The notes: generated by a model from the letters alone, not told the origin. DNA of 64,000 nucleotides from Lytechinus pictus (GCF_037042905.1 NC_087256.1:18724001-18788000), one strand, 5' to 3'; shown: positions 16,878 through 43,289, counted from the stretch's first letter. Program-made: numbers and translations.

Positions 16878-18282
16878 AAAGTTATTGATTTATAAACTTA
16901 TTAAACTTATGATAAACTTATAAGACTTAGTTTCATTATTAGTTTTAGTTTACTTTGATTAATATTTATGGATATACTTTGCTCAGTTTGTATCTGTTTA
17001 AAAGAAATAATAATAATAATCGCGGTATATTGACCCAGGGTAGTCACTTCAGGTGGGTGTTTCATAAAGCTGTTCGTAAGATAAGAGCGACTTAAAGAAC
17101 GACTGGTGATCCTTTCTTTTAGTAAATGGTATACACCATTGGCAATGGTTTAGCGCGTAAGAAAGGATCACCAGTCGTTCTTAAAGTCGCTCTTAACTTA
17201 CGAACAGCTTTATGAAACGGCCCCCTTCCGAAAACTGTTCTCCCAGCGGGCCCTGCTATTATTATTAAAAGTAAGTCCCCAAAATCCCAAATTTTTTTTT
17301 ATTTCATGGCTGTAATTTCTTTTTAAGGAGCTAGAAACTTAATTAGAATTGTATCTTTAGTAAGGCCATCGCATACCTTACGAGTGGTCCACGATCCGAT
17401 TTTGGAGCAAATCGCAATTTGCTCATTCTTCAGAAAATGTGAATGAAAAGTATTTTTTATTTGACGTTCAACTGAAAGAATACTAATATAACAATTTTGG
17501 ATGAGAAAAAAGAAAAAAGAAAGGAAAAAGAAATAAATATTTGAATTTTACTTTATTCATTTACTTTTTTTTTCTCAAAGAAAACAAACGTTAATAATAA
17601 AATATTTATGATGGCGATAATAGTCAAATTTGACTGGTTGCCAAATAAAAATAAGAACCCCCCGATGATTGTAAGCCTTTATTTGGGGGTGAAGGCCAAA
17701 TAAATTTCAAATTGTAGCCAGTCGTAGGATTTCTGACGTCATTACGACTAGATATTCAATTCGCTTTTATTCTAAAAAGGATGATAGCATAGTCACAGAC
17801 ATGCACGGAATCACAATAGCCTTATTCATGTATTTTGTACAGTCGTGGTTACTGAAAAGTTAGAGTCAGGTTCGGGGGCCTATGTTACAAGTCATGTGTT
17901 TCCTCTTTAAGGGGGAACTAAACAGAACCTGGGGAGGAACTTCTTGTTAAAGGACAAGTCCACCCCAACGAAGTGTTGCTTTGAATATAAAAATTCCAAC
18001 AAGCATAACACTGAAAATTTCATCAAAATCGGATGTAAAATAAGAAAGTTATGACATTTTAAAGTTTCGCTTAATTTCACAAACAGTTATATGCACACCC
18101 TGGTCGATATGCAAATGAGGAGACTGATGAAGTCATCCACTCACTATTTATTTTATTATATGAAATATGAAAAATTCTAATTTCATCCTCATTGTCAAGT
18201 GAAACAACAATTAATTCCTCCCTGAACATAATGGAATTAGCATTCTTTGATACTATACACTCTTAAAATAACCTCTTCAAAT

Positions 18283-18590
18283 TCTGAAAAGATTTCCTTG
18301 TCAAATATTTTCGAATAGAAAACTATTCAAAATGAATAGTTTTCTATTCAAAATGATTAGAAAACTGTTCAAAATGAAAAAGAATCGTTTCATTTTGAAT
18401 GACAAAGATAAAAAGATTTCCTTGTCAAATATTTTGAATAGAAAACTGTTCAAAATGATTAGAAAACTATTTAAAATGAAAAGAATCGTTTCATTTTGAA
18501 TGACAATAACAAAAAGATTTCCTTGTCAAATATTTTGAATAGAAGACTATTTAATGAAAATAGAGAATCGTTCCCTTTTGAATGACAAAA
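18283..18590. repeat. Left subterminal repeats of the EnSpm-like element
   Basis: Three copies of AAAAGATTTCCTTGTCAAATATTTT(C)GAATAGAA plus multiple (C)TATTCAAAATGA motifs. Confidence 0.8.
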
Positions 18591-19261
18591 TGCCCGGGGC
18601 ACGTATACTGACCTAAAAAATGTGCCGCCGCAAACACCCTCTTCACGCCTTAATTGCCTGCCGCTCCGTAGACCCCATATAAATTCAAGCACAATATTTA
18701 GTTCACAAGCCCTTTTTGAAAATTCTTAATCCCTTTTGGGGGAAATTTAATATCTAGACCCCCGGCCATTTTAAGCAAATTTCAGATTTTTTTGCTTCCA
18801 GAGCAATTGACAAAAAATAGCTCTCAACTTCAAACGGCATTTGACCCCCCCCCCCGTCAGAAGCTTTGCCCGGCCCCCCCCCCCCTCCAAGTTGCCCCCA
18901 ATAATTTTCGGAGTGAAAAATTAAAGGGTTGAAAATGAGAAAGAAAAGAAAAGGGAGGGTTTTTTTGTCCGGCTTTGCCCCCCCCCCCACATTTTGTTTT
19001 GCCCCCTATTTGCCCCCCCCCTTAAAAATCCTGGTGCCGCCACTGCTTTTAAGGTCACTTCGGTTATAGATCTCCTTTTCAGAGTCAACTCGGTTATACC
19101 TGTCCCCCGTTTCAGAAACCGGGGCCGCACATCCCTACCAAACCCAAAGTTGAGTGCCCCCCCCCCCCCCCGACAAAATGACGTGGATGCTGAAAATTTT
19201 TGATACGTATTATATTCTCTTCAAAATGACGTTGTCTTCGATGAAACATTTCATTGGTCAA

Positions 19262-19366
19262 ACTTGTTGACTGACGTCACCGCGCCGGCCGCGCGCGCGC
19301 AGCTAGCGCAGCGCAGACGATCATTTGAAATCAGTCGCCATATCATGAGTGTATACCGCGGTAAGT
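19262..19366 (+). promoter_or_regulatory. Probable promoter and first exon of the transposon transcript
   Basis: CRE palindrome TGACGTCA (19272-79), a CpG-rich GCGC run, Inr-like TCATTT/TCAGTC, and a strong donor CG|GTAAGT at 19361. Confidence 0.5.
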
Positions 19367-19837
19367 TATCCAGTTTAATCTGTAAGATATTACATGATTT
19401 TGTCGGTGAAGTAGTTTTATTTTTATATGTATTAATATGCTCTATTCTCTTGAACAAATTTCTTGTATCTGCAACAGTGCCATCATACGATTTTCGGTCA
19501 AAATGCAACTCACAAAATGTCAATGCAACTCACAAAATGTCATGTACGATCACTGCGATGCTACTCGATGCACTGTATACGTTATGATTTATGATTGATG
19601 TACGGTAGCTTAGCCTTAGCCTACTGCATTCGACAGTCTGCATGCAGTTTGCACAATGATTAGTCTGGAATTGATGTTGTTTTATGATGTTCACCCCTGG
19701 GCCTGGCCCTGGCCCTGGTCTCGCGGCTAGCACTAGCAGTCTCAGTCATAAGACAGCAAATGGAACTCGAGTAAGTTAGGCTTGGAAGTTGGGGCCTGGG
19801 CTAGGCTAGGCCTACCTTAGGTCTAACGTTAGGCTAA

Positions 19838-20359
19838 CCCAGAGAGCTCCCGCCCGCACAGCGGGCGGGAGCCCAGAAGCTTACCGTGTATTTTACCATT
19901 GTCACCGGACTAGGGTGATTTATGGTCTAAATATTTCTCCAAATGAATTGTGAAAATGGAAAGTATACAATTACCACGATTATATGGATGAAGGTCTAAC
20001 GAGTGGCAGATTCCTGACATCTGGGCACAGTCTGGAACCTCAAAAAAACGAAAAGTTCTCTCCTTCTACCCAGTCTCGATCGGCCATTTTGTTACGATTT
20101 TTAACAAAAATGGCCGATCGAGACGGGGTAGAAGGAGAGAACTTTTCGTTTTTTTGAGGTTCCAGACTGTGCCCAGATGTCAGGAATCTGCCACTCGTTA
20201 GACCTTCATCCATATAATCGTGGTAATTGTATACTTTCTGTTTTCACAATTCATTTGGAGAAATATTTAGACCATAAATCACCCTAGTCCGGTGACAATG
20301 GTAAAATACACGGTAAGCTTCTGGGCTCCCGCCCGCTGCGCGGGCGGGAGCTCTCTGGG
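19838..20359. mobile_element. Near-perfect 522-bp fold-back piggyBac-like MITE
   Basis: CCC...GGG termini, ~257-bp arms almost identical, centre near 20097, flanked by CTAA and TTAA. Confidence 0.85.
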
Positions 20360-20884
20360 TTAACGTTAGGCCTATCTAACTAGTATTACTAGGCCTAACT
20401 TTAGGCCTACTAGGCCTAGTAAGTTATGGTTAGCAATATAGCATGTCGAGTCGTCTTGAGCAAGGCAAGGCAAAACAAGGCAGACCCATGTAGGCCTAGC
20501 TATAGGCCTAACTGTTAGATCCCGGCGGGGCCTAGATCTATCTAGTAATCTACATTACGAGTATATTCATGAAGCGTGGATTGTATAGGCCCTGAAGGCT
20601 AAGGTATTCAGCGATCTCATGCACAAAAATGTCAAGAAGCATATTTTTATTCCAAACCTCATTTCATACTAGGCCTGGGCCCTGACCCAGGCCAAGGCTA
20701 GACTAGATCAAGGCCTAGCCCTAGCCTAGCCTAGGCCCTAACTTAGTTTAGGCTTAGGCCTAACTTTAGTATTTGATATTCAATTTTTTTTCAATGAATG
20801 CCTAAGTTATGGCTTCACTGTCTTGAACTTGAAGGTAGCTATAGCCTAGGCCTAGTAGGCCTAACTTAGGCCTACTACTGATTT

Positions 20885-25090: not shown

Positions 25091-28000
25091 ATGGATGACT
25101 TTGTTAAAGAGAAACTAGTGATGTGGGGGCTGGAAAGATTTCTGGAAAATTTTGAAGGTAAGCTTTTGTAATCATAACTGTTCAACTGTCGCAAAATTTG
25201 ATATTGTTGCTTGAAGAATTTCTCAGACTGAGCAAGTTTAATTGAGTTTAACACTGCATTTGGTATGCAAAACAGTGTTAAATATGCACAGTAAATGCAT
25301 GCCTAAGCCTTCCGTATTTGAATGTACGCAGCACGCAAGACATTTACTGCCGTTCAATCAAAGTCCGAGAATAACGTTGGGCGTTCATGGTTAGTAACAA
25401 ATCACTTTACACACTTTTTTTATCCGTTCGAGAAATTCCTCAAGCAACAATAAAATAATATTCCATCTATAATGTGAGCCTGTCTGGCTATGGATTTGTT
25501 TGGCCATGCTTTGACCTACGGAGCTGTTTGGCTTGTAGGGGGTTAGCAAGCTTGAAGGTGTGTGATGTCAAGCTTCCAAATTTTGCACTCATTTTTACTT
25601 GGAATATTTATAATGAGCGATCAACTTTAAATTGTTGTTCAAAATAAAATGTTTTGCCGACAGACTTACCCAACTTTCTGGGCAGTATGTAACCAGAACA
25701 ATTTTGTCCCGCCTTATGTTTGTTGTTGAACCTATGACAAATGTGTACAAAATAGTTTTGAATTAAAAGTAGGAGTGGGCTTTATACAGGGGTCAAAAAC
25801 ACTTTTTTGGTAATTTAATTTTTACAACAGTGTTTTTTTTGTGGGAAATGACTTATCTCAATATAATATGGAAAAATTTTGGACTATGTGTTTACCAAAA
25901 AGGTGCGCCATGCCCTCTTATGTCAGCTCATAGCTATTGAAATTGTGGGAAGGAGCAAAAAGTTACTTAATTTCACTCATTTTCAGTGAATATTTCTGTA
26001 CCTTTGGTGTCAAATTAGATGCAAATGAAGTCAAAATACAAGATTTTGAAAGTTCTGTAAAAATCAGACATTTCGTTTTTGTGAAATGCGCCATCATAGG
26101 TTAAAATGTAGCATGAGGGTGCTTTTCATTCTTTCAAAATTTTTTTGAATTTTTTGCTTATCAAAGGATACCAGAATAAAGATAATACTAAGTTTGACAT
26201 CCTCAAGAAGTTTGAGCTTTCTATTGCAAATGGTTTATCTGTAGCGACTATTAGAGTATCCGATTAGAATCGATATGTTTCCCATCAAATTACACAGAGG
26301 AAAATTTTGGTCGGTAAAGAGCGTGCATTATTTACAGGGGAAGGGGCAAGGAGAAACTTATGGGGGAGGGGTGTCATATGATTTTCAGTTGGTCAAATAT
26401 TAAAGGGCATTTTGGGGAATTTGGGTCCTTGCATGCTTAGAACACAAAAGGGAAGATGCAATGCATTAATATGTGTGAGATAAACATAGTGTGCCTCAGG
26501 TTTTTTGCGCCATTATCACTTACGCTAATATTGCAGAAAGATTTTGCTTACATGCGCACTAGAAAGCCATGTGAAGAACTTTGAATCTTCCTAATTTTCC
26601 AAGATTTGTGTAGGTCATCAGCAAATATTATGTTTCAAACTTCAAAAGTGTTTCTTGAATTTGATACCAATTAAATTCTACCAAATTCAGCTACATTGTA
26701 TGTATTATGAAGATTCCCCAACTACTGCTCCATGAGATCGAAGCGAGAACTTCGACTCAAGAACCACTAATTTTTTTTCTTTCTAATTACACCCCTCATG
26801 AAAACCTGGTAAAAACACACATGCCCACAATGCCTGTAATCTGGATCATGAATAACACGGAATATGGTCATATGGTTTTATTTGTAACAGAACAAGAGAT
26901 TGACCAAGAAACCCTCCTTCTCCTTGATGATCAAGCTGTGAAAGCGGATTTGATAAAGCCACTTGGTCCAAGATCAAAGCTGCTCCAAAGGATAAAGGAA
27001 TTGAAGGTACTTTTATTTTGACTTTTACTCTGTAAAGGAGTATATCGGAAACACTATTCTAATGGAATATAATTGTACTTGTCCCAAGTGTGGTGAACTT
27101 ATAGACGGTGGCAGTAAAGCAATTTTATGGCATTTACAGAATCGACATGGTGTTATTAAGGGCCGTATTTTTACAGAAAGTATAGTATGTATGCAGGAAG
27201 GGTGCCAACGAACATTCTCAGGCAGAACGGAACAGTTCAAGCGCCACTTGATGAGTCATGCTTGTACTAGAGAACCACATGGCCATGTCCCACCACGTCC
27301 ACATGGTAATTTTGATAATGCTGCAGATGTTGACGCAGGCAATGATTTTGCTGAAAACATTGATGTTGACATTGACCCAACAGAAGGGGATGCTGAGATG
27401 TGGGATTATTTTGGTGAGGATGAAATTAAGGAACGGGCTGTCATGCTGGTTGCGGGTCTGCTGGCAAACAGTAGCATTGTCCATACCACAGTTAATGAAG
27501 TTGTAGAAAAGTCAGCTTCTTTAGTTAAAGACACGTGTATGTATATAAAATATAAGGTGCAAAAATTCGGTGCAGAAACTGGACTTGAAGAAAATGATGA
27601 ATTTCAAAGTCTCCTATTGGATATAGATATGGTTTCCCACCCGTTTGATAACATGGAAAGTCAATACAAGCAGAAGAAATTCTTCAAGAACAGTGCAGCT
27701 TTTATTCAGCCTGAACAAACTACAATAGGTATTGCATATTATCCATGTAATAACCGTTTAACAGGCAATGTGCAGCAGGTTATGAAGACTATCACATGCC
27801 AGTACATTCCAATTAAAAAGCTAATAACCTTATTGCTTGAAAAAACAGATCTTATGAAACTAGCTGTAAGCTATGTACCAAGCACAGATGGTATGATGCA
27901 TGATTTTCAAGATGGTTTTTTCTGCAGGCAAAGTAGGTTTTTATCTAGCACTCGTACAATCAAACTAATTCTGTATGTAGATGACTTCGAGGTTACCAAC

Positions 28001-31000
28001 CCTCTTAGTCCTAAGTCTGGGACTCACAAACTGACAGGAGTGTATTTCAAAATTGCTAGTGTACCACCTCAATACCGGTCAACTTTAGCAAACATATATT
28101 TGTTGATGCTGTTCAATTCAAGTGACGCAAAACTTTATGGATATCCTGTGATTTTGTCACAATTGCTGAAAGATCTGAAGGTGCTTGAGTCAGATGGTAT
28201 AGCCATTCATACCGACACTCTTGATGGAGTTGTAAAGGTTGGGATAGCACAAGTAGTAGGAGACAATCTAGGGATTCACTCATTGTTTGGTTTCAGCGAG
28301 GGCTTCACAGCAAACTTTCCATGCAGAACTTGCCGAATGCCACGTGCTGACATAAAGCATGCTTTACTTGAAAGAAAAGAAGTAATGCGGACACCTGAGA
28401 ATTATCAACTGGACCTTAATAGGAATAGCTTACAAGAGACTGGTATAAAATCACCATGTATCTTGAATGAATTGACACACTTTCATACTCTAGACAACAG
28501 AGCACCAGACATCATGCATGACATGCTAGAGGGAGTGTGCCCCTTGGAGGTGAAATTGGTGCTGCATGAACTTATCAGAAAACAAGCTTTTACATTAGAA
28601 ACATTAAATGCCAGGATTACGAGTTTCAATTACGGCCTACCTGATGCAAGTAACAAACCCTGCCCCTTCACTAGCAATCAGCTTCGTTTTCCTGATGGTG
28701 CTGCAGGACAGCATGCAGCACAAATGTGGTGCCTTGTCCGTCATATTGGAGTTATGCTTGCGGATCTTATTCAAGAAGATGATGAGCACTGGGAACTTAT
28801 CGTAGCTTTGAAACAATGTATGGATATCATTTTTTCATCTAAGATAAGCAAGGGACATACCTTGTTCTTGGCACAATTAATTAGAGACCACCACATGCTC
28901 TTTTTGCAACTCTTTCCTGATCGTGATCTGAAGCCGAAACACCACTTCATGAGCCACTACCCTTCAGCAATGCAGCTGCTTGGACCTCTCATTATTTATT
29001 GGGTGATGCGTTTCGAAGGAAAGCACAACTTTTCTAAACGTTTGGCACACATTGTGTGCAATTTCAGAAATATTGCCAAAACTCTAGCCTACAGAAACCA
29101 AATGCAGCTTTGCTATAACGTATTAAGCAATCAGACAATGACACAGAAATCTGTTGAAACAGGTCCTGGTTTATCTGTGATGTTAGCATCATTGGAAGGT
29201 GCTGAAATTATATCTCAGACATGTAGCATACCTTTATATGATGATATATATGTTGCACAGTGGTGCAAGGTTTATGGTACTGAGTATCGTGAAAATATGA
29301 TGGTGGCAGTTAGCAAAAATGACAATGGAGATGCCCAATTTGGAAATGTGAGAACAGTGCTTGCAGTTGGTACAACAGTTTTTCTTGTGTGCCATTTGTG
29401 GCATACATATGGATTTAAAAGACACTTCCATGCTTATGCGGTACAACCTAAAGAGCCAAAGGAAATAACTGTGGTTCAAGTTGAGAATTTGATTGACTCT
29501 AATCCCCTGCATGCTACTAAATCCTATGATGACGATGATGACTTGTATTACATAAGCACAAGATGTATGTTGTAGGTGAGTAATTCAATCGCAAAAAAGA
29601 TTGATTTATTTTGCTAAGTTACTAAAACAGGATTTTCAATCTACTGCAGGTCACAAACCATTAATTTTGAGCCAGAGCTCGATATACAATGCACATGTAG
29701 AGGGTGCACAGCACACATGCACAATGTAGATAACATTTTTTGTTTGCATGTAGAGTTTCTGACCTGCATACACATTGTGCATGTGAAGAAATCTGATTAA
29801 TTCGTTACAATTTCAACTCACAACTCACTTCCTTTATGACTGCTTGCTGTTCATAGCAATGTAACTTGACACTTTGACGGACATGCAGGATCCAAATTTT
29901 TGGTCTAAAAACTTGGATGTTAATACTGTATATAAGTTTTCAAGTTTTACATGTAATAGAAACTCTTAGTTTAAAAAAAAAAGTCGATGCTTTGACATAA
30001 AAACAAACAGACCAAAAAAAAAAACAAAGGAGTACATAGACCTTCATGTTTGAGTAGCTCAATAGCTCAGGAACTCCTGAAAGAGCTTGTAAACCAGCTA
30101 GGGAGTTTTGTAAAGATTTAGTGATTCTACCTGATCTTAGTACAACTCTTGTATGAAACTATAAGTAGTATAGTGATTAAATGCTGATTGGAACTTTTGG
30201 AATTTTGAATAAATTATCTCTGGGAATCCATTGAGCACTCTGTTTTGGGAATTGTGAAAACAAATTTAATGATTTACTGTATTAATAACCATCTGTTCTG
30301 CACTTCACTACTTGAGGGACCATCATTGATCTCTGAAGATTGCACGTTCTCTGAAGATATCCCAAGTACTAGCAACTCCTCACTGTCTATCCCAAGTGGT
30401 TCATCAACATCTATCATCAAACCACCAGAAGATATCCCAAGCACCAGCAACTCCTCAACGTCTATCCGAAGCAGTTCATCATCAACATCTAAACCACCAG
30501 AAGATATCCCAAACACCAGCAACTCGTCAGTGTCTATCCCAAGCAGTTCATCAACATCTATCATCAAACCACCCGAGGCTAAAAAGATCAAGATGGCTCA
30601 TGTAAGTTTTTAATCAACATTAAGGGAGGTCAGAGCCTTGCGACTTCTGTAAAATTGTTTTCATTCATTGTAACTTGAAAACTGATAATGTATGCTGAAT
30701 AAATGTAGACACTTTTTAAAAGGAAATTTCACAAGAAATCTAATTATAGCATCAGATTTTAGATTAAGAACTTGCTTTTCAGAAACTCACCAAAAACAGC
30801 AAGTTATTTATCCAATTTTTTTAACAAGCCTAGAAAAAATACTTTTGGGTAAAAAATGGGTAAACATCATCTAAATCGATAGTTCTTGGGTATGTTTTTT
30901 TTTTTTTTTAAGTTAAATTCCTATTTTTCAAAATATTTGTCAGTAAAGGCAAAAATCATTTTTTTAAACCAAAAAAACCCATGATTTGTAAAGCAGTTAT

Positions 31001-34000
31001 TTGACACATATTGGCTGTTTTTTAGAAAAATATGAAATTAATTTAAAAAAAAGGTATGAAAACAATCCCAGAAACTATCGATTTGGATGATGGTACCACA
31101 TTTAACGATTGTTGGCGCAAAATGAAGAAAAAAAATGTACTAGCTAGGCTCCTTGTTTGTTCCTGTTCCTATAGTATCTCTCTCATATTCTAGATGTGAA
31201 GGCCCCGGCACATACATGGATCACTTAAAGCATCCACTTATGACCTTTCTTTGTAATCACTTCTGATCTGCAGGACATACGAGCCATCTTGTCCAAACGG
31301 AGAGAGGGGGAGGAGCTTATAAAGGAGATGGAGGAAGGGTGCATCAGCTACAATTCACGAAAATTGATAGTGAACACATTGGTCTCACACCTGATAGAGA
31401 CATATACAAAGTGGTAAGCTAAAATCCTATGAGCAGAAAAAGGAAATGCTAGCGTATTTAGATGTGCTATACTATGTGGTAGTTTATTTGCTTATTTGCC
31501 TTACCAATTGACTCCAGTGATCAAATAGATGTCAAGGATTAAAAGTTTGACCACAGACACATACATACCATTTCAAAAGCAATCCCTTTCTCTTGTAGAT
31601 GACACAAAAGTTAATTATCAACTTAACTGGTGCATTGCATACCAGAAATAACCAGACACTTGGTATAAAAATTGTATACATGTAATCTTATCTAAGAAAT
31701 TTCACATAAATTTATATTTTTTTACATTTTCATGGCATAATTGAAACTTGTGTGTTGATATTTAAACACAGCTTTTGAATTGTTTATCACATTTACATAA
31801 CAAATACATGCAATGAGCTGACATTACATGTGTATTATGCAGGTGCTTGGAAATAGTTTGGTGTGATACATACACCTTGCACTGTTTGTCTGCTTTATTA
31901 AAGGATGGGAGTTTGGAATTACTAAAATCAGAAAATGGGTGGATCAAAATTTTGCTATATAAAGGATATTCTCAAAGCAGATCACCAATGAAGCAGAAGT
32001 TCATCAGACTACAATTCAAAGCAGGGAATAATTTTGCTTCCCAGATTTGATTAGAAATTTTTGGAGATGGGAAAATATTTAAAACAAATTATGTACAATC
32101 CCATGGAAAAAAAATTGTGACACAAAGTAAATTTTGTGTAGCAGCCCTGCAAAAAAGCAAAGCAAATTGCGATGCGATACTAGGTAATTTATTCCCTGCA
32201 AAGAATTGCATTTAATCTCTAATATATATAGCCTTTTAAAACAATATTCTTAAACATTCAATTTTCATTTTTCTAAAGGCCTAAAACAGAGCAAAAATTG
32301 GCAATGGCAAAATGCATTGTTACCCAGTTTCCTGCGTTGGACAATGATGATCATGATGCTTACGTAAGTTTTGAGTTCATTATGTTAGTTCATGGCTAGA
32401 TAAATTGTGTGTAACATTGTTACTTGTTAAAGATAGGATCACCCATTTACAAGCCATGTTCATCATTGACTTTAGGCTCATGATGACCAAGATAACCATT
32501 GTTTATACTTAATATCAGCTAATGCTAAATGACCCCCTGAACACGTTATCTGCAGCAGGTTATTATTTACTCAACCAGACAAAAGTGGATGAAACTTGAT
32601 ACAACTGAAAGTCTAAATGCTTAAATCATTGAAAGGTTATTGTCTCAGATTGGGCAAGCCTTTATTAAGGTAAATCTGATTGACCGTACAGTTACCCCAA
32701 AGGGTAATACAAATTCTTATGAACAGTGATCTCTACTTCTAAAATTCAATAGTTTTGTTTTACTTTTTTTACTCTTTTACTTTAAAGTTGACCTGGTTCA
32801 CTCCAGCAAGCCAAAACAAAACAAAAGATTCATCAGGTTACATTGAAATGCGGCTAAGGAACGTCAGATATCGTGATCCTGCCAGAACGCCAAAAGAAAG
32901 CAACAAGAAAGTGCAAGCAAACTTGCCTAATACAGAAGACCTGGATCTGTCGTCAGGTAAGGAAGAAATATAACAACTGAACATTACATAACCTTAGTTA
33001 ATTGGTCATGGAGATCTAATAGGGGTATTTGTGTCTGCCAGGGAAGCATACACAGAATTAGTCTCAAATAATACCCATGCATGTGTATAGTGTCTTTTAA
33101 AAAGTGGGTTTAAGCAATCATGCTGACACATTCAAGCGACATCTGAATATACAAATTAGTTGCGCTGTAACGAAAATGAGGCAATTTTTCGTATCGATCT
33201 GAATGATATTTTGGAGATCTGCGCCACAAGTTCCTTCCTTTTTTTCTGTACCCTTTTTGTTTGTACAAAATAGTGAAATCAGTCAAGAAATATTCAGGGA
33301 AGTGGTTAATTCTTGACATCTTAACAAATAAACTCCTAGTGCTTTAAGGCTTCACATGCTTCATCTATTCAGCACCATGCACATTACAGTGTATGAGCCT
33401 GGGGGTTGAGCGTGCATCATGCAGGCTGCGACGATTTTTTCTTCACTTGATTGCCTGGTCAGGCAAGCTTGGCCTTAAAACTGCTTGACCTTGCTAACAA
33501 GCCGCATAACAAAACGGTCTGTGCAAAGTTAAAAGTCAGAATATGTTTATGGTTTGTAACTATTTAAGACATGTATAATTTTTGGATGTGTGTAACTTAA
33601 CATTACGAAAATAGCCCATTTGGAGTTCCACCGCTGTTGGGGTATCAAACTGCGGTAATATACCCCAAAATACGTTTGAAAATCTCATTTCTCATTTGAA
33701 CATTTCCAAGCCCCGATAAACCCATCTTGGCCATGTAATCCCCGTTGTCTCAATTTCACCTCCACAGGCCAGTAAAGCCAAGGACGAAATGATAAACAAC
33801 AGCTGTGCTATTACGTAAGACTTCTCTGCCTGAAGAAGGAACTTCGGAATTAAATTATTGTCTTCGATATTTAATCACGTTTTCAAAGGCATATTGTATT
33901 CAGACATCCAATATTAGTCCTTTTTCAATTTCGAACGAAGAAAATCGACCTCGAAATAAGGAAAATAAGCGAATAAAAATTAGGTTATGCTTTGCATGCA

Positions 34001-37000
34001 GGGACTGCCCTTAAAGCGCTGCGCACACGATGCATTCACCGCGTGTATACACGGAACTCCATAGCAGGCTCTTAGACACGTTGCAATCCATCGTGTGTGA
34101 CCCCCTGCTGTGCTGGGCTGTCGAGTTATCTTCAGAGCGAGGTCAAGAAATAGGTGTTTTGATACTTAAATTTCTTGCTTGGGGGCAGATCGGGATTATA
34201 GTGGTTGGAGAAGAGAATTGGTGAAAACGATTTGGGGTATACCCCTTTCAAATGGAGGTATTTCGTCATGAGTGATAACATTGATGCAAGCTAACTTACG
34301 ATTTGATATTAATCATTGTTGCCCAAACCAAAAAATGATTGCCCAGGGCAATCAGGCAACCAATTGTCACAGCCTGCCCACATGTTTTATTTCTTGTGTT
34401 AATTTTTTACTGTCATCAGGTGAAATGGAACATTTGCTTGTGACTGTCATGACTTATAAATAAACTAAAAAGGCATAATGCATTAACTCCCTGAATTTAT
34501 TTGCATATTTAGATAGAGATGAGGAAGTAGATGCAAAAATAAAGTGGCTTCAGGACCACAAAGAGCCAAGGCAACAAGTTCGATCATGGATGAGGGATAC
34601 CTGTAAGGCGAGGGCAGGCTACATTAGAGACAATAAGGACAAACCTGTGCAAGAGCTTTTACTGTTGTTTCCACGTTTAATTGACACAGAAGGAATGGTA
34701 AGTTTTCAATGGTACTGACTAGTAAAGTCTTCCTGCTTTTGCAGTAATTCCTGCTTTTTTAATTTATGATTTCCAGCTTGATCTTGCACTTTTATCTAAT
34801 TTCAGCCCGTTTTGAAGGCTTTTAAAAGCCCAGATTCATTCACATTTTCAGGTTTTTCCTTCAGGCCAGCTTGCATTTCTAAGACGATGGCACAGTTCTG
34901 TAATGTGATGTGAAAAAAATAGGGGTGTCTACATAGGGTGGCAAAATATCACAGCTCTCACAGTTCACAACTTATACACTTTTTAGCTCCCTGCGTTCAA
35001 ATTTTTTGCAGAGCCATTTTTTGACCAGTCAGCTTAGTAAATTATTCAATTTTATGTATATGTAATTCTTGTAGTTTCCACTTTAATAGAGCAAATAGAA
35101 TGTACAAAACAGGTTTTCTTTATACTAATGACAAAACATAAAACTATTCGATTTTAACTTTGTCTTTATACAGGTTGACCAGGATTTCCGAATTCTTTTC
35201 CCACAATCAGCAGATAAGTTATTCCTCACATGGCCGAAATTTTGCAGACATGTCCTGAACTATGCTGAAAAGCAGGTGGATTGGAGGCTATACCTTAACT
35301 TCAAAGGTGCTGTTGAAACAGGTAAAATGGTGCTTATGTCTAACAGCTTCACTCTTCTTTCAAACCTACAGTCAGGCCATGCCATGCCCGTCACTTTGAC
35401 AGGTAACTTCCCTTTTTGACGGGCAAGTAATGAACATTTTATACAAATTCAGCCCATTTTGGACAGGCACTCTTTCAAAAATGAGGGGCAACTCCAAAAT
35501 TCTAACTAAGGCCCTGCCTACAGTAGTGAATATGCAATTTGAAATCCATTCTACATGTATGTATTATAATAGCTTGGTGAAAACCTGATAATCCAGACTA
35601 TGATTGTCCCATTTCAGTAAGTGGGATTAATGTTAATGTTAATTAATTAGAGCGATGTGAACTATATCAACATTTTTTTACAATTTGCAGTAATAGTAAT
35701 AAACTACAAATATGTCTGGAAAAGTATTTGTTTCTTTTAAATATGAATATTATTATTAATTCATTTACTTTGTCGTACGAAAACTTGCTTCCTTCATCAT
35801 ATCATTGCTGAGATGATAAAAGCCTTATATCTCAACAAAAAAGTGAAATGTTCAGGAGAGCATAAATACATTAATTGCTTTCAATACAAGATTACAGATC
35901 ATGTTCATGTAAGTTGCAAGGTTCAGTAAGTTCATTGTACATGTAGGACATAATATTTGCAAATTGAAATGCAAAAGTTTGTCAGAACAAAATCTGAATT
36001 AATTAGCAACAACAAAATCTTTTTTAAAGTCATTTTCATCAAAATTTGACATGCAGATCGATTTTTATCATCTCTACGCCAATATTGGGATCTTAAATTT
36101 ATGCTACTGACATGTACAGTGATTTTAGTATTGAAGGATGAAAATTTTTGTTAAAAATTTGCTATTTCAAGATAACTCTAATTTGACCTCTGTCAACATC
36201 ATTCTCACCCACCTAAGACTATAATATAACCAATGATATTATAGTCTCATTCACTGGTCTTGAGTCGTATTTGATAACCACCTCTTTATCTCCAATTTGA
36301 AATTGTGTGATATGAATGGAGGACAAAGCCCGTGTTTGATGCTGGGAAGGGGGTCTTAGTAAAAGGGTGGGTACAGGGATGTGTGGCCCGAATAGGGTCC
36401 TTTTTGGCCTCTCTTGTTTACCTATGGCCCCTTTTTTAAAAATTGGTGTACATATTAATTTTTGAGGAATTTTTCTTTGGTTTACCGATATATTGTCAAA
36501 AAGTACTTATTTGCATTCCAATTTACTTGGTATTAAAAAACACTGATTAGTTTTAAAAAGGCCCCTTCCAAAAGCAACAAAAGTAAATGGTTAACACATG
36601 GGTTGCAAATTTGCATCTTCTTAGGTTTACTCATCAAAGGGTGGTTGTTGGAAATTTTGGGTGTTCGGGCTGCACATCTGTACTTAACTTTAATCTCAGG
36701 TTAGATGTGATAAAATGAGCACAAATTAATCTTAGTCTGTCCTGGAGTTTACTTCTCTGCAGGTGTTTTTGCCGTTGCTATCATGTCACGTTTGCGGCGT
36801 CTGTACGCGCTTTCATATGCACTTGTTTGATTCACAACACGCTCCCATAACTGGTTGATGAGCAATTTACTCTTGCTATGCTGCGGCATAAATTGTTCTT
36901 GTACAGATGTGACTTTGATGTGAGTTTGAGAGAAAATAAACATTTGGAAGAACTATAATTTAGAAACTTACAAATGTAGTTGTATCTTGTCTCCTATGTT

Positions 37001-38987
37001 TCAGATGAACAGGAGGTAAACTTATCTCTGCAGGTGTTGCCTATGCTGTTTCCACCGGGAAAGAAGAAAGGGGCAAAAGGGAGAAGTGGTTCTTCAACGA
37101 TGGATGAAGCCCGCAAGGCATTCGTGCAGCGCAAAGAGGTGAGGAACAAATTTTATTTTTACTATTTGGCACACACTGTTTCAGACAGATCAAGCAGAAA
37201 TTAAACAAATACCCAGAGCCTGCTATTAAAAGGACAGGACTGAGATTATTTTAGTGATATTACATAAAACACACAGTGGCTCATTGCAAAGGGTTGTAGC
37301 ACCTGGGCAAAAAGTAGAAATTGCTCTCCTACAGTATATCTGGGGCACTCCTATGACTCCATGAAAGCCTAGACAAAAATATGACATTTTGTGAAAGAAA
37401 CTGCAGTAAACTCCTTTCTGGATGGAATTTTTTATAGTAAAATTTAAATAATTTGACAAGCCCGCTATAGTGCTCTATAAGTTTGAGTCAGTTAAATCAG
37501 CTATATGACACAAAAACTAAGCAATTGTGGCAGCAAGGGTATTTACACGTCTGAGACGCATAGTGTGTGTGTGTGGGTGAATTTTCGTCTTTTTTAACCC
37601 CCAAAATTTGACATTTGAAAACGTGGATCCGTCAGAAAAATCTGCAAACAGACGTGTTTATTTTGAATCTTCACAGAAAAAATAATCAGTTTTAAGGCTG
37701 GTGTCAACCTGTCAATGTTTGAAAAGGTTTTGCTCTGTAAATCAGCCTTAATTATTATTCCTAGTAAATGAGTGCGTTTGTAATCCTAATAGGAATATGA
37801 AGCTATCCATTATGAGACAATATATGACAGTGCATTTAGCGGTCAACACAGTGAAGCTACACATTATAACTAAACGCGAACTGCTCTACTTGGTTTGGAA
37901 TATTGTATGTTTGAATAGGGGTGTACATTTTTCAATAAAAATGTTGTTTTTTTTGGGGGGGGGTGTTGACATCATCTTTGGTTTGAAAATTACTCAAATT
38001 TGTGACTGAGAATGAGAATAAAAGATAGAATTAATTGTTTTGCCTGTCATATATCGTCTCATAACGCAGGCGCGGATCCAGGATTTCTGGGGGGGGGTTC
38101 AAACTGGGAAAATTTTCTGACAATAATTTGAAACCTGACAAGCAAAAAAAAAAGAAAGAAAAAGCTTATCACTCCTTTTTGAAATCTGACAAGCAAAAAA
38201 AAAAGTCTTTATTACTCCTTTTTGAAATCTTACAAGAAAAAAAAAAAGGTTATCACTCCCTTTTTTCCCCCGCTCGCCCCCCCCCCCCCCCCCCCCCCCC
38301 GTATCCGCGCCTGTCATAATGGATGGACGTACATTACAAATGATAGTACTGTTCCGTAGTGATTACTAAAAAACCTGAGAAATTAATTTTAAAAAAAATT
38401 TCTTTGAAAACTGTTCTGGAGGAAAATATGTTTCAGTGAGAATTGAGTTCAACGAATATTGGCATGTATAGCTGCTGGCTGTATTTCCCTGCATTTATCA
38501 GAACTTAGTCTGGCATTCAGTATAGCCCTCCGCTTCACAACCCTCACTACATTTGCCTGTTTTACTAAGATTGAAATGATGCACTAAATATTCCCTCCTT
38601 CATTTGTGGATGGTTCTGCTATCTCACTTGTCACCAATTTTATTTGTATTTCATATGCAGATTGGTACAAACATACCAGGCTTCTTGGACCAGAAGACTC
38701 AAACACAACCGTTTGTGTTAATTCAAGGTGAAATTGACAAACCAGAACAAGTGTTTGTTGTTGTGGAAAATAGCACCATCCCATGTACAAGTCTCCTGAA
38801 AGGAATTGATATATGCATGAAACTAGTGTATATCCTTGATATGGATTATGCTTGGCAATGTCAACATGTTTGGGACTTTCTGCAGAAGAATGTTTACAAA
38901 CTTGGGCAGGTGAAAGGTAGAGGTACCTCAGTTCCAGCAGTAACACTTCTCAAAACCTATCTAGAAAACAAGGTAAAAGAAGTTTAG
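25091..38987 (+). CDS. Transposon-encoded SAM-domain / SAMD3-like protein, 10 coding exons, 551 aa
   Basis: Manually spliced GT-AG exons 25091-25157, 26891-27006, 30317-30601, 31274-31413, 32279-32363, 32788-32956, 34513-34697, 35174-35321, 37005-37138 and 38661-38987. Phases 1,0,0,2,0,1,0,1,0 are all compatible, giving 1656 nt with no internal stop. N-terminal SAM (VKEKLVMWGLERFLENFEEQEIDQETLLLL...IKPLGPRSKLLQRI), then AKCIVTQFPAL, GYIEMRLRNVR, FPRL, QPFVLIQG and IDICMKLVYILDMDY...VWDFLQK, which I recognise as SAMD3-like. The exon 3 acceptor is an uncommon GAG. Confidence 0.85.
27062..29575 (+). CDS. Intact EnSpm/CACTA-family DDE transposase with N-terminal C2H2 zinc fingers, 837 aa
   Basis: CPKC..H..H and CMQEGCQRTF..H..H fingers. 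Catalytic-region motifs LYVDDFEVTNPL, HKLTGVYF, GDNLG, FPCRTC, DIMHDMLEG, PKHHFMSHY and WVMRFEGKH. Single uninterrupted ORF inside TIRs. Confidence 0.9.
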   Translation: MEYNCTCPKCGELIDGGSKAILWHLQNRHGVIKGRIFTESIVCMQEGCQRTFSGRTEQFKRHLMSHACTREPHGHVPPRPHGNFDNAADVDAGNDFAENIDVDIDPTEGDAEMWDYFGEDEIKERAVMLVAGLLANSSIVHTTVNEVVEKSASLVKDTCMYIKYKVQKFGAETGLEENDEFQSLLLDIDMVSHPFDNMESQYKQKKFFKNSAAFIQPEQTTIGIAYYPCNNRLTGNVQQVMKTITCQYIPIKKLITLLLEKTDLMKLAVSYVPSTDGMMHDFQDGFFCRQSRFLSSTRTIKLILYVDDFEVTNPLSPKSGTHKLTGVYFKIASVPPQYRSTLANIYLLMLFNSSDAKLYGYPVILSQLLKDLKVLESDGIAIHTDTLDGVVKVGIAQVVGDNLGIHSLFGFSEGFTANFPCRTCRMPRADIKHALLERKEVMRTPENYQLDLNRNSLQETGIKSPCILNELTHFHTLDNRAPDIMHDMLEGVCPLEVKLVLHELIRKQAFTLETLNARITSFNYGLPDASNKPCPFTSNQLRFPDGAAGQHAAQMWCLVRHIGVMLADLIQEDDEHWELIVALKQCMDIIFSSKISKGHTLFLAQLIRDHHMLFLQLFPDRDLKPKHHFMSHYPSAMQLLGPLIIYWVMRFEGKHNFSKRLAHIVCNFRNIAKTLAYRNQMQLCYNVLSNQTMTQKSVETGPGLSVMLASLEGAEIISQTCSIPLYDDIYVAQWCKVYGTEYRENMMVAVSKNDNGDAQFGNVRTVLAVGTTVFLVCHLWHTYGFKRHFHAYAVQPKEPKEITVVQVENLIDSNPLHATKSYDDDDDLYYISTRCML
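30354..30575 (+). repeat. In-frame Ser-rich tandem repeat (about 3 x 23-25 aa) in exon 3 of the SAM gene
   Basis: EDIPSTSNSS..SI.S.SSTS(II)KPP repeated three times. Confidence 0.85.
38067..38313. mobile_element. CAGG-ended MITE with 8-bp TSD in the last intron
   Basis: CAGGCGCGGATCC ... GTATCCGCGCCTG, with TSD TCATAACG/TCATAATG. Confidence 0.7.
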
Positions 38988-39048
38988 GGAGGCATATGTT
39001 TGTACAACACATTTAGGTGAATTGGTGTATTTAAGCCTAATGGATGTA

Positions 39049-39610
39049 CCCGGGGGGGCCACTTACATTGACGAGTGGATACCATGCGCGACCAAAAAAA
39101 CACGTAAAAAGGATGTCTTTTTCAAGATAGGGCACGTTACGTACGTAACGTGATAAGGGTGTCAAAAACACAAATATGATGAAAAAAGGGTATCTATTTC
39201 GCTAGGAAAGCTACGTGTTTAGGGTCAAATTTGCGGGGATGATAAAACAAAATTAAAATGCTGTATAAAGGATGTCCTTTTTGCCCCAACACTACGTATT
39301 TAGAGTCCCGATTTGCGCGAGGTGAGGAAGGTGGGGCCTTAAAAACCAAATGGTGTGTAAATTAGGTAAAACCGACGGACCCGTGACACAACTATAAAAT
39401 ATCGCTGTATACTTGTTTAGGGGTTCATTTCAGGGAATACTTGCCAAGAGTATAGTTTTGTTTCCAATACTTGTTAAGGGTAGGGTTTCAGACGCCAATA
39501 CTTGTTAAGGGGTGCATTTTCAGATCATGGAAAATACGTGTTTAGGGTGCTTTTCGAGACCCCGTGGTCGCGCATGGTATCCACTCGTCAATGGAAGTGG
39601 CCCCCCCGGG
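39049..39610. mobile_element. Young MITE with CCCGGGGGGG termini and perfect 8-bp TSD
   Basis: TIR CCCGGGGGGGCCACTT(A/C)CATTGACGAGTGGATACCATGCGCGACCA; TSD TGGATGTA on both sides. Confidence 0.88.
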
Positions 39611-41699: not shown

Positions 41700-42294
41700 A
41701 GGGCAAGTCCACCACAACAAAAAGATGATTTGAATAAAAAGAGAAATATCAAACCAGCATAACGCTGAAAATTTCATCAACATTGGATTTAAAATAAGAA
41801 AGTTATGACATTTTAAAGTTTCGCATAATTTCACAAAACAGTTATATGCACATCCTGGTCAGTATGCAAATGAGGGAACTGATGTGGTCATCCACTCGCT
41901 ATTTCTTTTGTATTTTTATTATATGAAATATGAAATATCGTAATTTTTTTCTATATTACAAGTTTTAAAAGGGCTTGACTCCTTCCTACATGTGGGGAAT
42001 CCACTTCTGCAACATACTGCAATTAAACAAAGAGCTCCCTTATTGACAAAACTACAAAATTTGAAAATATTCTATATTTCATATAATAAAATACAAAAGA
42101 AATAGTGAGTGGGTGACGTCATCGGTCCATGCTGACCAGGATGTGCATATAACTGTTTTGTGAAATTAAGCAAACTTTAAAATTTCATAACTTTCTTATT
42201 TCAAATCTGATTTTGATGAAATTTTCAGCGTTATGCTTGTTTAATTTTTTTTCTTTTGATTCAAATGAACTTTTTGTTGGGGTCGACTTGCCCT
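41700..42294. mobile_element. Intact Kolobok-like MITE related to the split host element
   Basis: TTAA|AGGGCAAGTCCACC ... GGTCGACTTGCCCT|TTAA with long inverted arms. Confidence 0.82.
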
Positions 42295-42764
42295 TTAAAA
42301 GGAGATGTTAACCTAGAGCTGTGAATGCTTTGTATACCAGATGTAGCTCGAGAATTGCAAACCCTATTTTTGTGGAAACAATTCTTACTATGAGAAAGCT
42401 TTACAATGGCTTAAAGGCATTGGTCAACATGGTGTTCAATTTTAAAAATCTGAGCTGCATGTTCTTACATGTATGCTATCAGGATGTCTATTGGAATATA
42501 GAAATGAACCTGAGGGGGGGGGATGCTTGAAGTTTTATCATTTACAGAAAAAACTTTTTAAAATTGGATAACTTCAACTTATCATCCCATGACTACTGTG
42601 CAGGAATTATTGTCTTACACTACATAATAAACATAATGTTCATAGATTATGTCTTGATAGTGAATATGTGACTTTCTTTTGTTTTTACTTATGTAATATA
42701 CCTTTCTATAATTTGTTATGTTTTTTATATTGTTAATGTTACCAATTCCTGAATTTGGTGTTGC

Positions 42765-42770
42765 AATAAA
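42765..42770 (+). promoter_or_regulatory. Candidate polyadenylation signal of the transposon transcript
   Basis: AATAAA with T-rich upstream and GT-rich downstream sequence, just inside the right subterminal repeats. Confidence 0.35.
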
Positions 42771-42832
42771 ATGTGTTATATGTGAAAGCTAACACTGATG
42801 ATTCTCCTGTTTTCTTTATGTGTGTATGACAA

Positions 42833-43130
42833 TGATTCTATTCATTTTGAACAGGATTCTATTCATTCTTGAATAGAAAGACTACTCATTCTTGAATAGG
42901 AATACTATTTAACTTTGAATAGGGTATATTCCAATTTAACAAGAGGATGAAACTGATTCTATTCATTTTTAATAGGATTCTATTCATTCTTGAATAGGAA
43001 AACTATTTAACTTTGAATAGAATACATATTCATTTATTTGAATAGATTTTCCTCTTCATTTTGAAGAGAACCTTGTAAGTGTCCCTCGGAAGAGGTTTTC
43101 TATTCAAATCTGAATAGATTCTATTAAAAA
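42833..43130. repeat. Right subterminal repeats of the EnSpm-like element
   Basis: Multiple ATTCTATTCATT(C/T)TTGAATAG(G) units. Confidence 0.8.
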
Positions 43131-43289
43131 ATGAAGAGGTTTTTTTTAGAGTGTATGGTTCTGTCAAGTTGGTCCTTATTGTCAAATCTGTACAAAATGA
43201 AATATTGTATAATTGAAACAATAAAAAAACACAATAAAAAGTGAGTGAGGGACATCATCGTCTGTCTTACCCTGATAGCAGACACGGTC

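What the first reader, a model, noticed from the sequence alone, without database searches (positions are those of the whole stretch)
18258..43153. Giant two-gene EnSpm/CACTA-like transposon pairing a transposase with a spliced SAM-domain (SAMD3-like) protein
Seen: TIRs, a TA TSD and subterminal repeats delimit one 24.9-kb unit. Inside are an intact 837-aa transposase and a 10-exon 551-aa gene that the ORF track shows only in fragments; its ten coding exons splice in frame, while the many secondary insertions fall only in introns or UTRs. Established: plant En/Spm needs a second protein (TnpA) that binds subterminal repeats, and SAM domains often polymerise. Inference: this protein is a dedicated accessory factor (a TnpA analogue) that could use SAM oligomerisation to coat or synapse the ends, and vertebrate SAMD3 may derive from such a gene. 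I cannot tell whether this pairing is already catalogued.
Basis: partly seen in the sequence, partly recalled or inferred. Interest (0 to 1): 0.9.

Follow-up and report, generated by a model that had tools for sequence, protein, structure and literature searches.

The report
Two-gene CACTA-like transposon with SAMD3-like gene
This is a real, recently active 23–25 kb cut-and-paste DNA transposon whose transposase gene sits inside an intron of a second, spliced SAM-domain gene resembling vertebrate SAMD3, and the same pairing is found in sea cucumber, ribbon worm, springtail and fish genomes.

Summary
Window 18258-43153 is bounded by 22-nt CAC...GTG inverted repeats, a 2-bp duplication and arrays of a GAATAG motif. 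Eleven other copies in the genome, over 99% identical, end at the same bases.

The 837-aa ORF is intact. Its core has a RAG1/Transib-like fold and the D..D..CxxC..HxxxH..E signature of the EnSpm/Mirage/Chapaev/Transib clade.

The 10-exon chain gives exactly 551 aa, with GT-AG at every intron. A 3.5-kb transcript contig supports the first three junctions.

The transposase ORF lies inside intron 2 of the SAM gene, as tnpD lies within tnpA in maize En/Spm. This layout recurs in at least eight diverged families of this genome, and in Holothuria, a nemertean and zebrafish. Two other fish carry the genes in tandem.

A model of a sea-cucumber homologue's non-SAM body matches only human and mouse SAMD3 in Swiss-Prot (E 1e-8). 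No Pfam family or solved structure matches it.

Not shown: that the protein binds the subterminal repeats, oligomerises or is needed for transposition, and the direction of the SAMD3 relationship. Only three insertions are private to this copy.

Another first-stage note (s1-317490) reports the same kind of element elsewhere in this genome. I found no paper linking SAMD3 to transposons.

The parts
18256..18257 (.). Left target-site duplication (TA)
   Evidence: TA flanks both ends of this copy. 2-bp duplications are seen in 6 of 7 fetched copies, including one CA/CA.
18258..18279 (+). 5' terminal inverted repeat, starting CACTC
   Evidence: 20/22 match to the right end. Similarity among 11 copies starts here.
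18290..18600 (.). 5' subterminal repeat array (TGAATAGAA-type motif in both orientations, inside ~100-bp tandem units)
   Evidence: 6 GAATAG/CTATTC sites here against 8 in the 24-kb interior.
25091..25157 (+). SAM gene exon 1 (ATG, first half of the SAM domain)
   Evidence: Homology to the N-termini of P0203 and P0205. A transcript contig joins 25157 to 26891.
26891..27006 (+). SAM gene exon 2 (second half of the SAM domain)
   Evidence: Pfam SAM_1, E 8.8e-5, 23.2 bits. RNA joints on both sides.
27062..29575 (+). Transposase ORF, 837 aa, inside intron 2 of the SAM gene. It has two N-terminal C2H2 zinc fingers and a RAG1/Transib-like DDE core.
30317..30601 (+). SAM gene exon 3 (Ser-rich repeated linker)
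   Evidence: RNA joint 27006 to 30317. The loose end after 30601 reads the start of exon 4.
31274..31413 (+). SAM gene exon 4
   Evidence: Homologue-guided, GT-AG, in frame. Its start is read by the transcript contig.
32279..32363 (+). SAM gene exon 5
32788..32956 (+). SAM gene exon 6
34513..34697 (+). SAM gene exon 7
35174..35321 (+). SAM gene exon 8
37005..37138 (+). SAM gene exon 9
38661..38987 (+). SAM gene exon 10, including the stop codon (most conserved part of the SAMD3-like body)
   Evidence: 652 database relatives, with the match at the protein's C-terminus in nearly all full-length ones. 96 own-genome matches.
19824..20360 (.). Insertion private to this copy: hairpin element with 256-nt arms and an ~11-bp duplication, upstream of the genes
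   Evidence: Absent from all 7 other fetched copies.
33600..34270 (.). Insertion private to this copy, in intron 6
39041..39610 (.). Insertion private to this copy: MITE with 47-nt TIRs and a 10-bp duplication, 54 bp after the stop codon (probable 3' UTR)
42836..43125 (.). 3' subterminal repeat array (same motif, both orientations)
   Evidence: 12 GAATAG/CTATTC sites.
43132..43153 (-). 3' terminal inverted repeat
43154..43155 (.). Right target-site duplication (TA)

Best explanation
Window 18258-43153 is an autonomous copy of a recently active cut-and-paste DNA transposon. It belongs to the EnSpm/CACTA-Mirage-Chapaev-Transib (CMCT) clade.

Shown:
- The element's one mapped spliced mRNA (3.5 kb or more) encodes a 551-aa protein with an N-terminal SAM domain and a SAMD3-like body.
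- The whole transposase ORF is removed from that mRNA as part of intron 2.
- The transposase region is itself represented in RNA-derived contigs at lower depth.
- The two genes have stayed together, on the same strand, through divergence down to about 34% transposase identity in this genome. They are also linked in other echinoderms, a nemertean, a springtail and teleosts.
- Two copies with the same internal deletion lack the transposase and SAM exons 1-3. They sit at two loci, each with its own TA duplication, so the ends suffice in cis and the proteins act in trans.

Inferred:
- The transposase binds DNA through its two C2H2 fingers. It cuts at the CAC termini with a RAG1/Transib-like DDE core (D307, D401, E652; C421-x2-C424; H628-x3-H632) and integrates with a 2-bp stagger, mostly at TA.
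- The transposase is translated from RNA that keeps intron 2. There the SAM frame stops 12 nt past the donor, and the transposase ATG follows 40 nt later.
- The SAMD3-like protein is an element-encoded co-factor that the lineage needs to propagate, the functional counterpart of En/Spm TnpA or the Harbinger Myb-like protein. It most likely helps assemble or regulate the end complex on the subterminal GAATAG repeats, possibly through SAM self-association.
For: Boundaries, TSD and copies.

Activity:
- Twelve copies are more than 99% alike. Seven have intact transposase ORFs.
- The SAM CDS and all 18 splice dinucleotides are intact in 5 of 5 full-length copies.
- Variable sites number 15 of 4170 in coding DNA against 151 of 18090 in non-coding DNA, Fisher p = 0.0009.
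- Copies C11 and C21 share the same deletion, 24621-31005.

Transposase class:
- Invariant D307, D401, C421, C424, H628 and H632, and E652 nearly invariant, across 33 homologues. This fits the C(2)C and H(3-4)H signature, the CA..TG termini and the 2-5 bp TSD described for this clade in PMC12730594.
- Sub-threshold but colinear Pfam Transposase_21 hits in 14 of 33 homologues, and DUF4218 hits in 4.
- The AF2 model (pLDDT 87) matches the RAG1 core at E 2e-9, and also BbRAGL and HzTransib.
- The profile's N-terminus matches tandem C2H2 fingers at E 1.8e-5.

SAM gene:
- A 551-aa chain that aligns end to end with RefSeq models from five species.
- RNA joints 25157|26891 and 27006|30317, plus the exon 3-to-4 read-out, in a 3526-nt contig of depth 16.5. 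Transposase contigs have depth 4-6, and the rest of the introns has none.
- All 12 near-identical exon-10 hits lie in element copies, so there is no retrocopy to explain the spliced form.

Pairing:
- 23 of 25 transposase loci at 34% identity or more have an exon-10 homologue 5.5-12.5 kb downstream on the same strand. The two identities are correlated, Spearman 0.72.
- SAM exon 2 lies 20-180 nt upstream of the transposase start in 19 of 23 loci.
- Holothuria, Lineus and zebrafish show the same nested layout. Triplophysa and Sarotherodon show a tandem layout. Folsomia shows linkage.

SAMD3 likeness:
- The modelled body of a sea-cucumber homologue (pLDDT 87.8) hits only SAMD3 human and mouse, E 1.3e-8 and 3.7e-8, over about 350 residues. 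The next hit has E 0.09.
- The Atlas feature search puts a SAMD3 cluster at 0.96.
Against: - There is no functional evidence for any role of the SAMD3-like protein.
- The transposase has its own zinc fingers, so it may not need a DNA-binding partner.
- The body has no significant match to any solved DNA-binding fold. The best is a homeodomain/HMG-like three-helix match at Z 4-5, which is within noise.
- The 5' structure of the transposase mRNA is unknown. Raw RNA-seq runs gave only 0-23 reads.
- The closest sister family (65% identity) shows no SAM exon within 1.5 kb upstream.
- Eight transposase loci at 31% identity or less have no detected partner exon.
- The window's own transposase has no Pfam hit.
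- The run that supplied the spliced contig is labelled RNA only by a guess.
Confidence: 0.65

Rival explanations
1. The SAMD3-like protein is a regulator, not a synapsis factor. It would control the element's own transcription or chromatin state, or its copy number, as TnpA also does at the Spm promoter. The transposase alone would then be catalytically sufficient.
For: - The transposase carries its own tandem C2H2 fingers.
- The spliced SAM mRNA is the more abundant product, as reported for the short transcripts of En/Spm and SmTRC1 (PMC1636069).
- No DNA-binding fold was detected with confidence in the body.
Against: Nothing tested here separates regulation from assembly. The dense subterminal motif arrays call for some multivalent binder, which could be either protein.
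Confidence: 0.2
2. The two products are coupled through a shared SAM domain. Using or skipping the exon 2 donor yields either SAM-body or SAM-transposase, and the SAM domains then bring the two proteins together. The window family would be a derived state in which the transposase has lost the fusion.
For: - In the own-genome family at C9:10394809-10397295 (locus L020), SAM exon 2 and its linker run in frame, without a stop, into the transposase, giving an open frame of 966 aa.
- The same N-terminal sequence is spliced to the SAMD3-like body in RefSeq model P0198.
- Transposase homologue P0034 has a partial SAM domain at residues 10-43 of the same ORF.
- SAM exon 2 lies within 180 nt of the transposase start in nearly all families and phyla examined.
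Against: - In the window family, Holothuria, Lineus and zebrafish, the SAM exon and the transposase are in different frames or are separated by a stop.
- No RNA shows a fusion transcript.
- The SAM homodimer prediction gave no verdict.
Confidence: 0.1
3. The SAM gene is a captured host gene, a passenger that the transposon happened to pick up, and it has no role in the element's life cycle.
For: Large DNA transposons do capture host gene fragments, and SAMD3 exists as a host gene in vertebrates.
Against: - The complete gene stays intact and linked to the transposase through divergence down to about 34% identity in this genome, and in four phyla.
- All five full-length copies keep the ORF and every splice site.
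- The gene is expressed and correctly spliced.
Confidence: 0.04

Closest known systems
Maize En/Spm (CACTA), with tnpA and tnpD
   Same: - CAC-type termini, a short TSD and arrays of a short motif in both subterminal regions.
- One unit encodes both a transposase and a second protein.
- The transposase ORF lies in an intron of the gene for the second, more abundantly expressed product (PMC1636069 as read).
   Different: - The second protein shows no similarity to TnpA in Pfam scans. It is instead a SAM domain plus a SAMD3-like body.
- The TSD is 2 bp, not 3 bp.
- The transposase is a single uninterrupted exon with C2H2 fingers.
- The Pfam tnp2 domain is detected only below threshold.
- Whether the transposase RNA arises by alternative splicing is not shown.
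SmTRC1 and other animal CACTA-like elements (DeMarco et al. 2006, PMC1636069)
   Same: An animal element with a 2-bp TSD, several spliced transcripts and a short abundant transcript lacking the transposase domain. The authors proposed that transcript as a TnpA analogue.
   Different: - Their accessory products had no detectable relatives in other animals.
- Here the accessory gene is a conserved family found across Bilateria, with a recognisable SAM domain and a vertebrate host-gene look-alike.
- Their TIRs start with CCC; these start with CAC.
Transib and RAG1 (with RAG2)
   Same: The core fold is the best solved-structure match. It shares the D..D..CxxC..HxxxH..E arrangement and CAC termini.
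   Different: - Similarity is at the fold level only, about 10-13% identity.
- The TSD is 2 bp, not 5 bp.
- The partner gene is unrelated to RAG2.
- No sequence-profile hit to RAG1 was found.
Vertebrate SAMD3 (Q8N6K7, Q8C4H2)
   Same: An N-terminal SAM domain followed by a body of about 350 residues. That body is the only significant Swiss-Prot structural match to the homologue model, and it is colinear: model residues 24-388 against SAMD3 155-505. The proteins are of similar length, 520 aa against 551 aa.
   Different: - Only 14-16% identity in the structural alignment, and TM 0.42.
- SAMD3 is a host gene and is not known to be linked to a transposase.
- No sequence-level test or phylogeny could be run here.
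PIF/Harbinger two-protein transposons (transposase plus Myb-like protein)
   Same: A DDE transposase paired with a conserved, element-encoded second protein.
   Different: The transposase superfamily is unrelated and the second protein is unrelated. The genes there are separate, not nested. This comparison rests on my own knowledge plus the mention in PMC12730594.

Membership tests
CMCT clade (EnSpm/CACTA, Mirage, Chapaev, Transib and relatives) | DDE catalytic triad | tested here: met
   D307 and D401 are invariant, and E652 is present in at least 90% of 33 homologues. The RNase-H-like core is modelled at pLDDT 87.
CMCT clade (EnSpm/CACTA, Mirage, Chapaev, Transib and relatives) | [quoted passage not shown] | tested here: met
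   C421-x2-C424 and H628-x3-H632 are invariant and lie between D401 and E652.
CMCT clade (EnSpm/CACTA, Mirage, Chapaev, Transib and relatives) | Termini 5'-CA..TG-3' and a TSD of 2-5 bp | tested here: met
   CACTC...GAGTG termini. A 2-bp TSD in 7 of 8 copies, counting the window: six TA and one CA.
CMCT clade (EnSpm/CACTA, Mirage, Chapaev, Transib and relatives) | Core fold shared with Transib and RAG1 | tested here: met
   Foldseek against PDB: RAG1 E 2e-9 over 560-680 columns, BbRAGL 6e-6, HzTransib 1.6e-4.
Pfam Transposase_21 (tnp2, plant-type CACTA transposase) | Match at the curated gathering score | tested here: not met
   The window protein has no hit. 14 of 33 homologues hit below the cut-off, best 23.5 bits against 28.6. 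The DUF4218 hits are colinear but also below the cut-off.
Subgroup within CMC (EnSpm, Mirage or Chapaev) | Phylogenetic placement among Repbase reference transposases | not testable with these tools
   No reference CMC transposase sequences were available. A 2-bp TSD is said to be typical of Mirage and of animal CACTA-like elements (my memory).
En/Spm-type two-protein system | Second protein encoded in the same unit, with the transposase ORF inside its intron | tested here: met
   Exon chain and an RNA joint, 27006|30317, skipping the ORF.
En/Spm-type two-protein system | Second protein homologous to TnpA | tested here: not met
   Pfam scans of the exons and of 35 homologues gave only SAM, with no TnpA-type family.
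En/Spm-type two-protein system | Second protein binds the subterminal repeats and is required for excision | not testable with these tools
   The repeats exist. Binding and requirement need bench work.
SAMD3 family | N-terminal SAM domain | tested here: met
   Window exon 2: SAM_1 at 23.2 bits against a cut-off of 23. Homologues P0203, P0225 and P0294 score 26-35 bits.
SAMD3 family | SAMD3-type body of about 350 residues after the SAM domain | tested here: met
   The only significant Swiss-Prot AFDB hits are SAMD3 human and mouse, E 1.3e-8 and 3.7e-8, probability 1.00. The Atlas feature score is 0.96. The model was built on a Holothuria homologue (37% identical to the window protein), not on the window protein itself.
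SAMD3 family | Significant sequence similarity or phylogenetic grouping with tetrapod SAMD3 | not tested
   No authentic SAMD3 sequence could be fetched. The word-based search reached only TE-type relatives, a few of which UniRef names SAMD3-like.

The most novel reading that the evidence does not exclude
A bilaterian-wide lineage of CACTA/Transib-clade transposons carries a dedicated SAMD3-like co-factor gene that hosts the transposase in its intron. Vertebrate SAMD3 would be a domesticated copy of that transposon gene. In some families one splice choice would make either a SAM-transposase or a SAM-co-factor, so the two proteins would assemble through a shared SAM domain.
Probability: 0.35. 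Interest if true: 0.85.

Novelty: new variant of a known kind. Interest (0 to 1): 0.72.

Why it matters
- It gives animal CACTA-like transposons a conserved, recognisable second gene. The only animal precedent I could read (SmTRC1) found accessory products with no relatives.
- It shows that the En/Spm-style 'transposase inside the co-factor's intron' layout is old and widespread in Bilateria.
- It offers a concrete origin hypothesis for SAMD3, a vertebrate gene whose approximately 350-residue body matches no Pfam family or solved structure here. It would also explain the many 'uncharacterized' or 'SAMD3-like' gene models in fish and invertebrate annotations as transposon genes.
- The family is young and has intact copies and natural deletion derivatives, so the co-factor question can be tested directly.

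Tried and rejected
- Pfam on the transposase alone: no hit.
- Profile search with alignment A1 in the 5.8-billion-protein set: only the query's own relative came back, probably because low-complexity linker words swamped it.
- Foldseek against PDB, VIA-align against 48,161 PDB representatives, and a profile-against-PDB sequence search for the SAMD3-like body: nothing significant. The best is Z 5.6 on 73 residues, and the homeodomain/HMG-like matches at Z 4-5 are within the tool's stated noise.
- Pfam on 35 body homologues at E up to 1: no recurring family.
- Complex prediction on a SAM homodimer (zebrafish homologue residues 1-66, two copies): 'no answer', score 0.00. This is evidence neither for nor against.
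- Raw RNA-seq runs X9-X11: 0, 9 and 23 reads at about 6% sampling, too few to map the transposase mRNA.
- The loose 5' sequence of six X11 reads ending at 28640 is not in the window and remains unexplained.
- The Yuan and Wessler 2011 paper could not be opened, so I took the motif definition from PMC12730594.
- An independent small transposase element nested in the intron was rejected. No inverted repeat brackets the ORF, and the adjacency of exon 2 to the ATG is conserved across phyla.
- A conserved frame relation between the SAM exon and the transposase was rejected: zebrafish differs.

Full report
**1. Is the unit real?**

The left end at 18258 and the reverse complement of the right end at 43153 share a 22-nt inverted repeat with 20 matches. 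It starts CACTC, and TA sits on both flanks.

Searching the window's own 812-Mb assembly with about 400 bp from each end gave 11 left ends and 12 right ends at 98-100% identity. Similarity starts and stops at the same bases, give or take the TA. Pairing these ends gives elements of 12.8 to 29.7 kb.

I fetched seven copies. Five are flanked by TA/TA and one by CA/CA, which shows a true 2-bp duplication and not a TA that belongs to the repeat. One is ambiguous.

GAATAG, counted on both strands, occurs 6 and 12 times in the two subterminal stretches of about 300 bp. It occurs 8 times in the 24-kb interior.

**2. Copies and activity**

The four full-length fetched copies are 23.0-23.1 kb and about 99.4% identical to the window copy.

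The window copy is longer only because of three private insertions. None touches a coding exon:
- 19824-20360, a hairpin element.
- 33600-34270, in intron 6.
- 39041-39610, a MITE with 47-nt TIRs, just after the stop codon.

All other embedded repeats are shared by every copy.

Among the 12 copies:
- Seven have an intact transposase ORF.
- One has a 2-bp frameshift near codon 286.
- One has stop codons.
- Three are internal-deletion derivatives.

Two derivatives, at different loci and each with its own TA duplication, share exactly the same deletion (24621-31005). The deleted form was therefore mobilised in trans.

Variable sites are rarer in coding DNA (15 of 4170) than in non-coding DNA (151 of 18090), Fisher p = 0.0009. 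The SAM CDS and all splice dinucleotides are intact in all five full-length copies.

**3. The transposase**

ORF 27062-29575 (837 aa) has no Pfam hit of its own. It has full-length relatives of 30-59% identity in echinoderms, a nemertean and teleosts, all unnamed.

In an alignment of 33 homologues, D307, D401, C421, C424, H628 and H632 are invariant, and E652 is nearly so. This is the D..D..C(2)C..H(3-4)H..E arrangement that PMC12730594 gives as the shared signature of EnSpm, Mirage, Chapaev, Transib and RAG1. The same paper gives CA..TG termini and 2-5 bp TSDs for this clade.

Further evidence on its class:
- Fourteen of 33 homologues give colinear but sub-threshold hits to Pfam Transposase_21 (tnp2). 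Four hit DUF4218 and one hits Plavaka.
- The AlphaFold model (pLDDT 87) finds the RAG1 core as its best solved match, E 2e-9 over 560-680 columns. BbRAGL and HzTransib follow.
- The N-terminus matches tandem C2H2 fingers.

I therefore place it in the CMCT clade. I do not file it under Pfam's tnp2 family, and I cannot assign a subgroup.

**4. The second gene**

The last large ORF fragment (38661-38984) has 652 database relatives, and in nearly all full-length ones the match lies at the C-terminus. Full-length relatives from Lytechinus, Amphiura, Anneissia, Holothuria and zebrafish guided a tblastn of the window.

Choosing the GT-AG sites that keep the frame gave ten exons. It aligns end to end with the independent RefSeq models.

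Exons 1 and 2 form a SAM domain. Window exon 2 scores 23.2 bits against SAM_1, and homologues score up to 34.8 bits.

The transposase ORF lies between exons 2 and 3, 55 nt after the exon 2 donor.

**5. RNA**

One run holds a 3526-nt contig of depth 16.5 that joins 25157|26891 and 27006|30317. It then continues from 30601 into the first bases of exon 4.

All near-identical exon-10 copies in the genome lie inside element copies, so no processed retrocopy explains this contig.

The transposase ORF is covered by separate contigs of depth 4-6, while the rest of introns 1 and 2 has no cover. This suggests a distinct, rarer transposase RNA but does not define it. The junctions of exons 4 to 10 rest on homology only.

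**6. Is the pairing conserved?**

Within this genome:
- 23 of 25 transposase loci at 34% identity or more have an exon-10 homologue 5.5-12.5 kb downstream on the same strand. The two identities co-vary, Spearman 0.72.
- An HMM of SAM N-termini finds SAM exon 2 at 20-180 nt upstream of the transposase start in 19 of 23 loci, covering at least eight diverged families. It does not find it in the 65% sister family within the 1.5 kb available.

In other genomes:
- Holothuria leucospilota, Lineus longissimus and Danio rerio show the same order: SAM exon, transposase ORF, body exons. In zebrafish a RefSeq model splices across the transposase.
- Triplophysa and Sarotherodon have the SAMD3-like gene ending 30-40 bp upstream of the transposase.
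- Folsomia has transposase fragments just upstream of the gene.

**7. SAMD3**

A model of the body, built on the closest named homologue with 34 relatives, reached pLDDT 87.8 and pTM 0.85.

Against Swiss-Prot models, the only significant matches are human and mouse SAMD3. They score E 1.3e-8 and 3.7e-8 at probability 1.00, with model residues 24-388 aligned to SAMD3 155-505. The next hit has E 0.09. The Atlas feature search agrees.

No solved structure and no Pfam family matches the body. Homology with SAMD3 is therefore likely. Its direction is untested.

**8. Mechanism**

Shown: the architecture, the expression of the spliced product, conservation of the pairing, and trans-mobilisation of deletion derivatives.

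Inferred: that the SAMD3-like protein is a needed co-factor acting at the subterminal repeats.

One family in this genome (locus L020) has SAM exon 2 in frame with the transposase, giving a 966-aa open frame. The same exon is spliced to the body in RefSeq model P0198. This suggests that in some lineages one splice choice yields either a SAM-transposase or a SAM-co-factor. In the window family a stop and a frame change separate them.

**9. Literature**

Searches for SAMD3 with transposon terms, and for EnSpm with SAM domain, found nothing relevant.

DeMarco et al. 2006 (PMC1636069) described animal CACTA-like elements with 2-bp TSDs and short spliced accessory transcripts that had no relatives elsewhere.

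Repbase and Dfam could not be consulted.

A first-stage note on another piece of this genome (s1-317490) describes the same kind of element.

Noticed in passing
L020 = G000:C9:10393309-10398795 (own genome, diverged family, 35% transposase identity): SAM exon 2 and a Pro/Ala/Gln-rich linker run in frame, without a stop, into the transposase, giving an open frame of 966 aa. The same N-terminal sequence is spliced to the SAMD3-like body in RefSeq model P0198 of Lytechinus pictus. That match also hints that the window's genome is Lytechinus or a close relative.
   Followed up: partly
G000:C12:19099140-19126898 (about 335 kb downstream of the window): A tandem array of at least 10 units with a period of 3059 bp. 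Each unit holds a degenerate piece resembling exon 10 of the SAMD3-like gene, most with a TGA stop inside. This looks like a satellite derived from a related element.
   Followed up: no
G000:C1:43.01-43.27 Mb and G000:C31:0.2-0.45 Mb: Many members of different families of this transposon lineage, both intact and broken, cluster in these two regions. They may be transposon-rich traps or clusters.
   Followed up: no
window 17984-18175 and 41696-42298: A MITE-like repeat with internal inverted symmetry lies just outside the left end of the element. It occurs again, inverted and 78-89% alike, inside the element's 3' region, where all copies share it.
   Followed up: no
window 19824-20360: A private insertion forming a near-perfect hairpin: 256-nt arms, 98% complementary, a 16-nt loop and an ~11-bp duplication (TAACGTTAGGC).
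   Followed up: partly
window 39041-39610: A private 570-bp MITE with 47-nt G-rich TIRs and a 10-bp duplication (TGGATGTACC), inserted in the probable 3' UTR of the SAM gene.
   Followed up: partly
window 28640 (inside the transposase ORF): Six RNA-seq reads of run X11 begin with about 82 nt that match nothing in the window and then continue from 28640. This could be a chimeric transcript, a related family or an unknown splice.
   Followed up: partly
window 30317-30601 (exon 3): The linker exon encodes three tandem copies of a Ser-rich unit of about 25 residues (EDIPSTSNSS...SSTSIIKPP). Homologues also carry low-complexity acidic or Ser-rich linkers here, but the sequence is not conserved.
   Followed up: no
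P0205:1-70 and the Atlas clusters: Arthropod clusters that resemble this protein family carry Pfam DUF4769, and the zebrafish N-terminus weakly hits the start of that profile (E 0.019). DUF4769 may be the arthropod counterpart of the SAMD3-like family.
   Followed up: no
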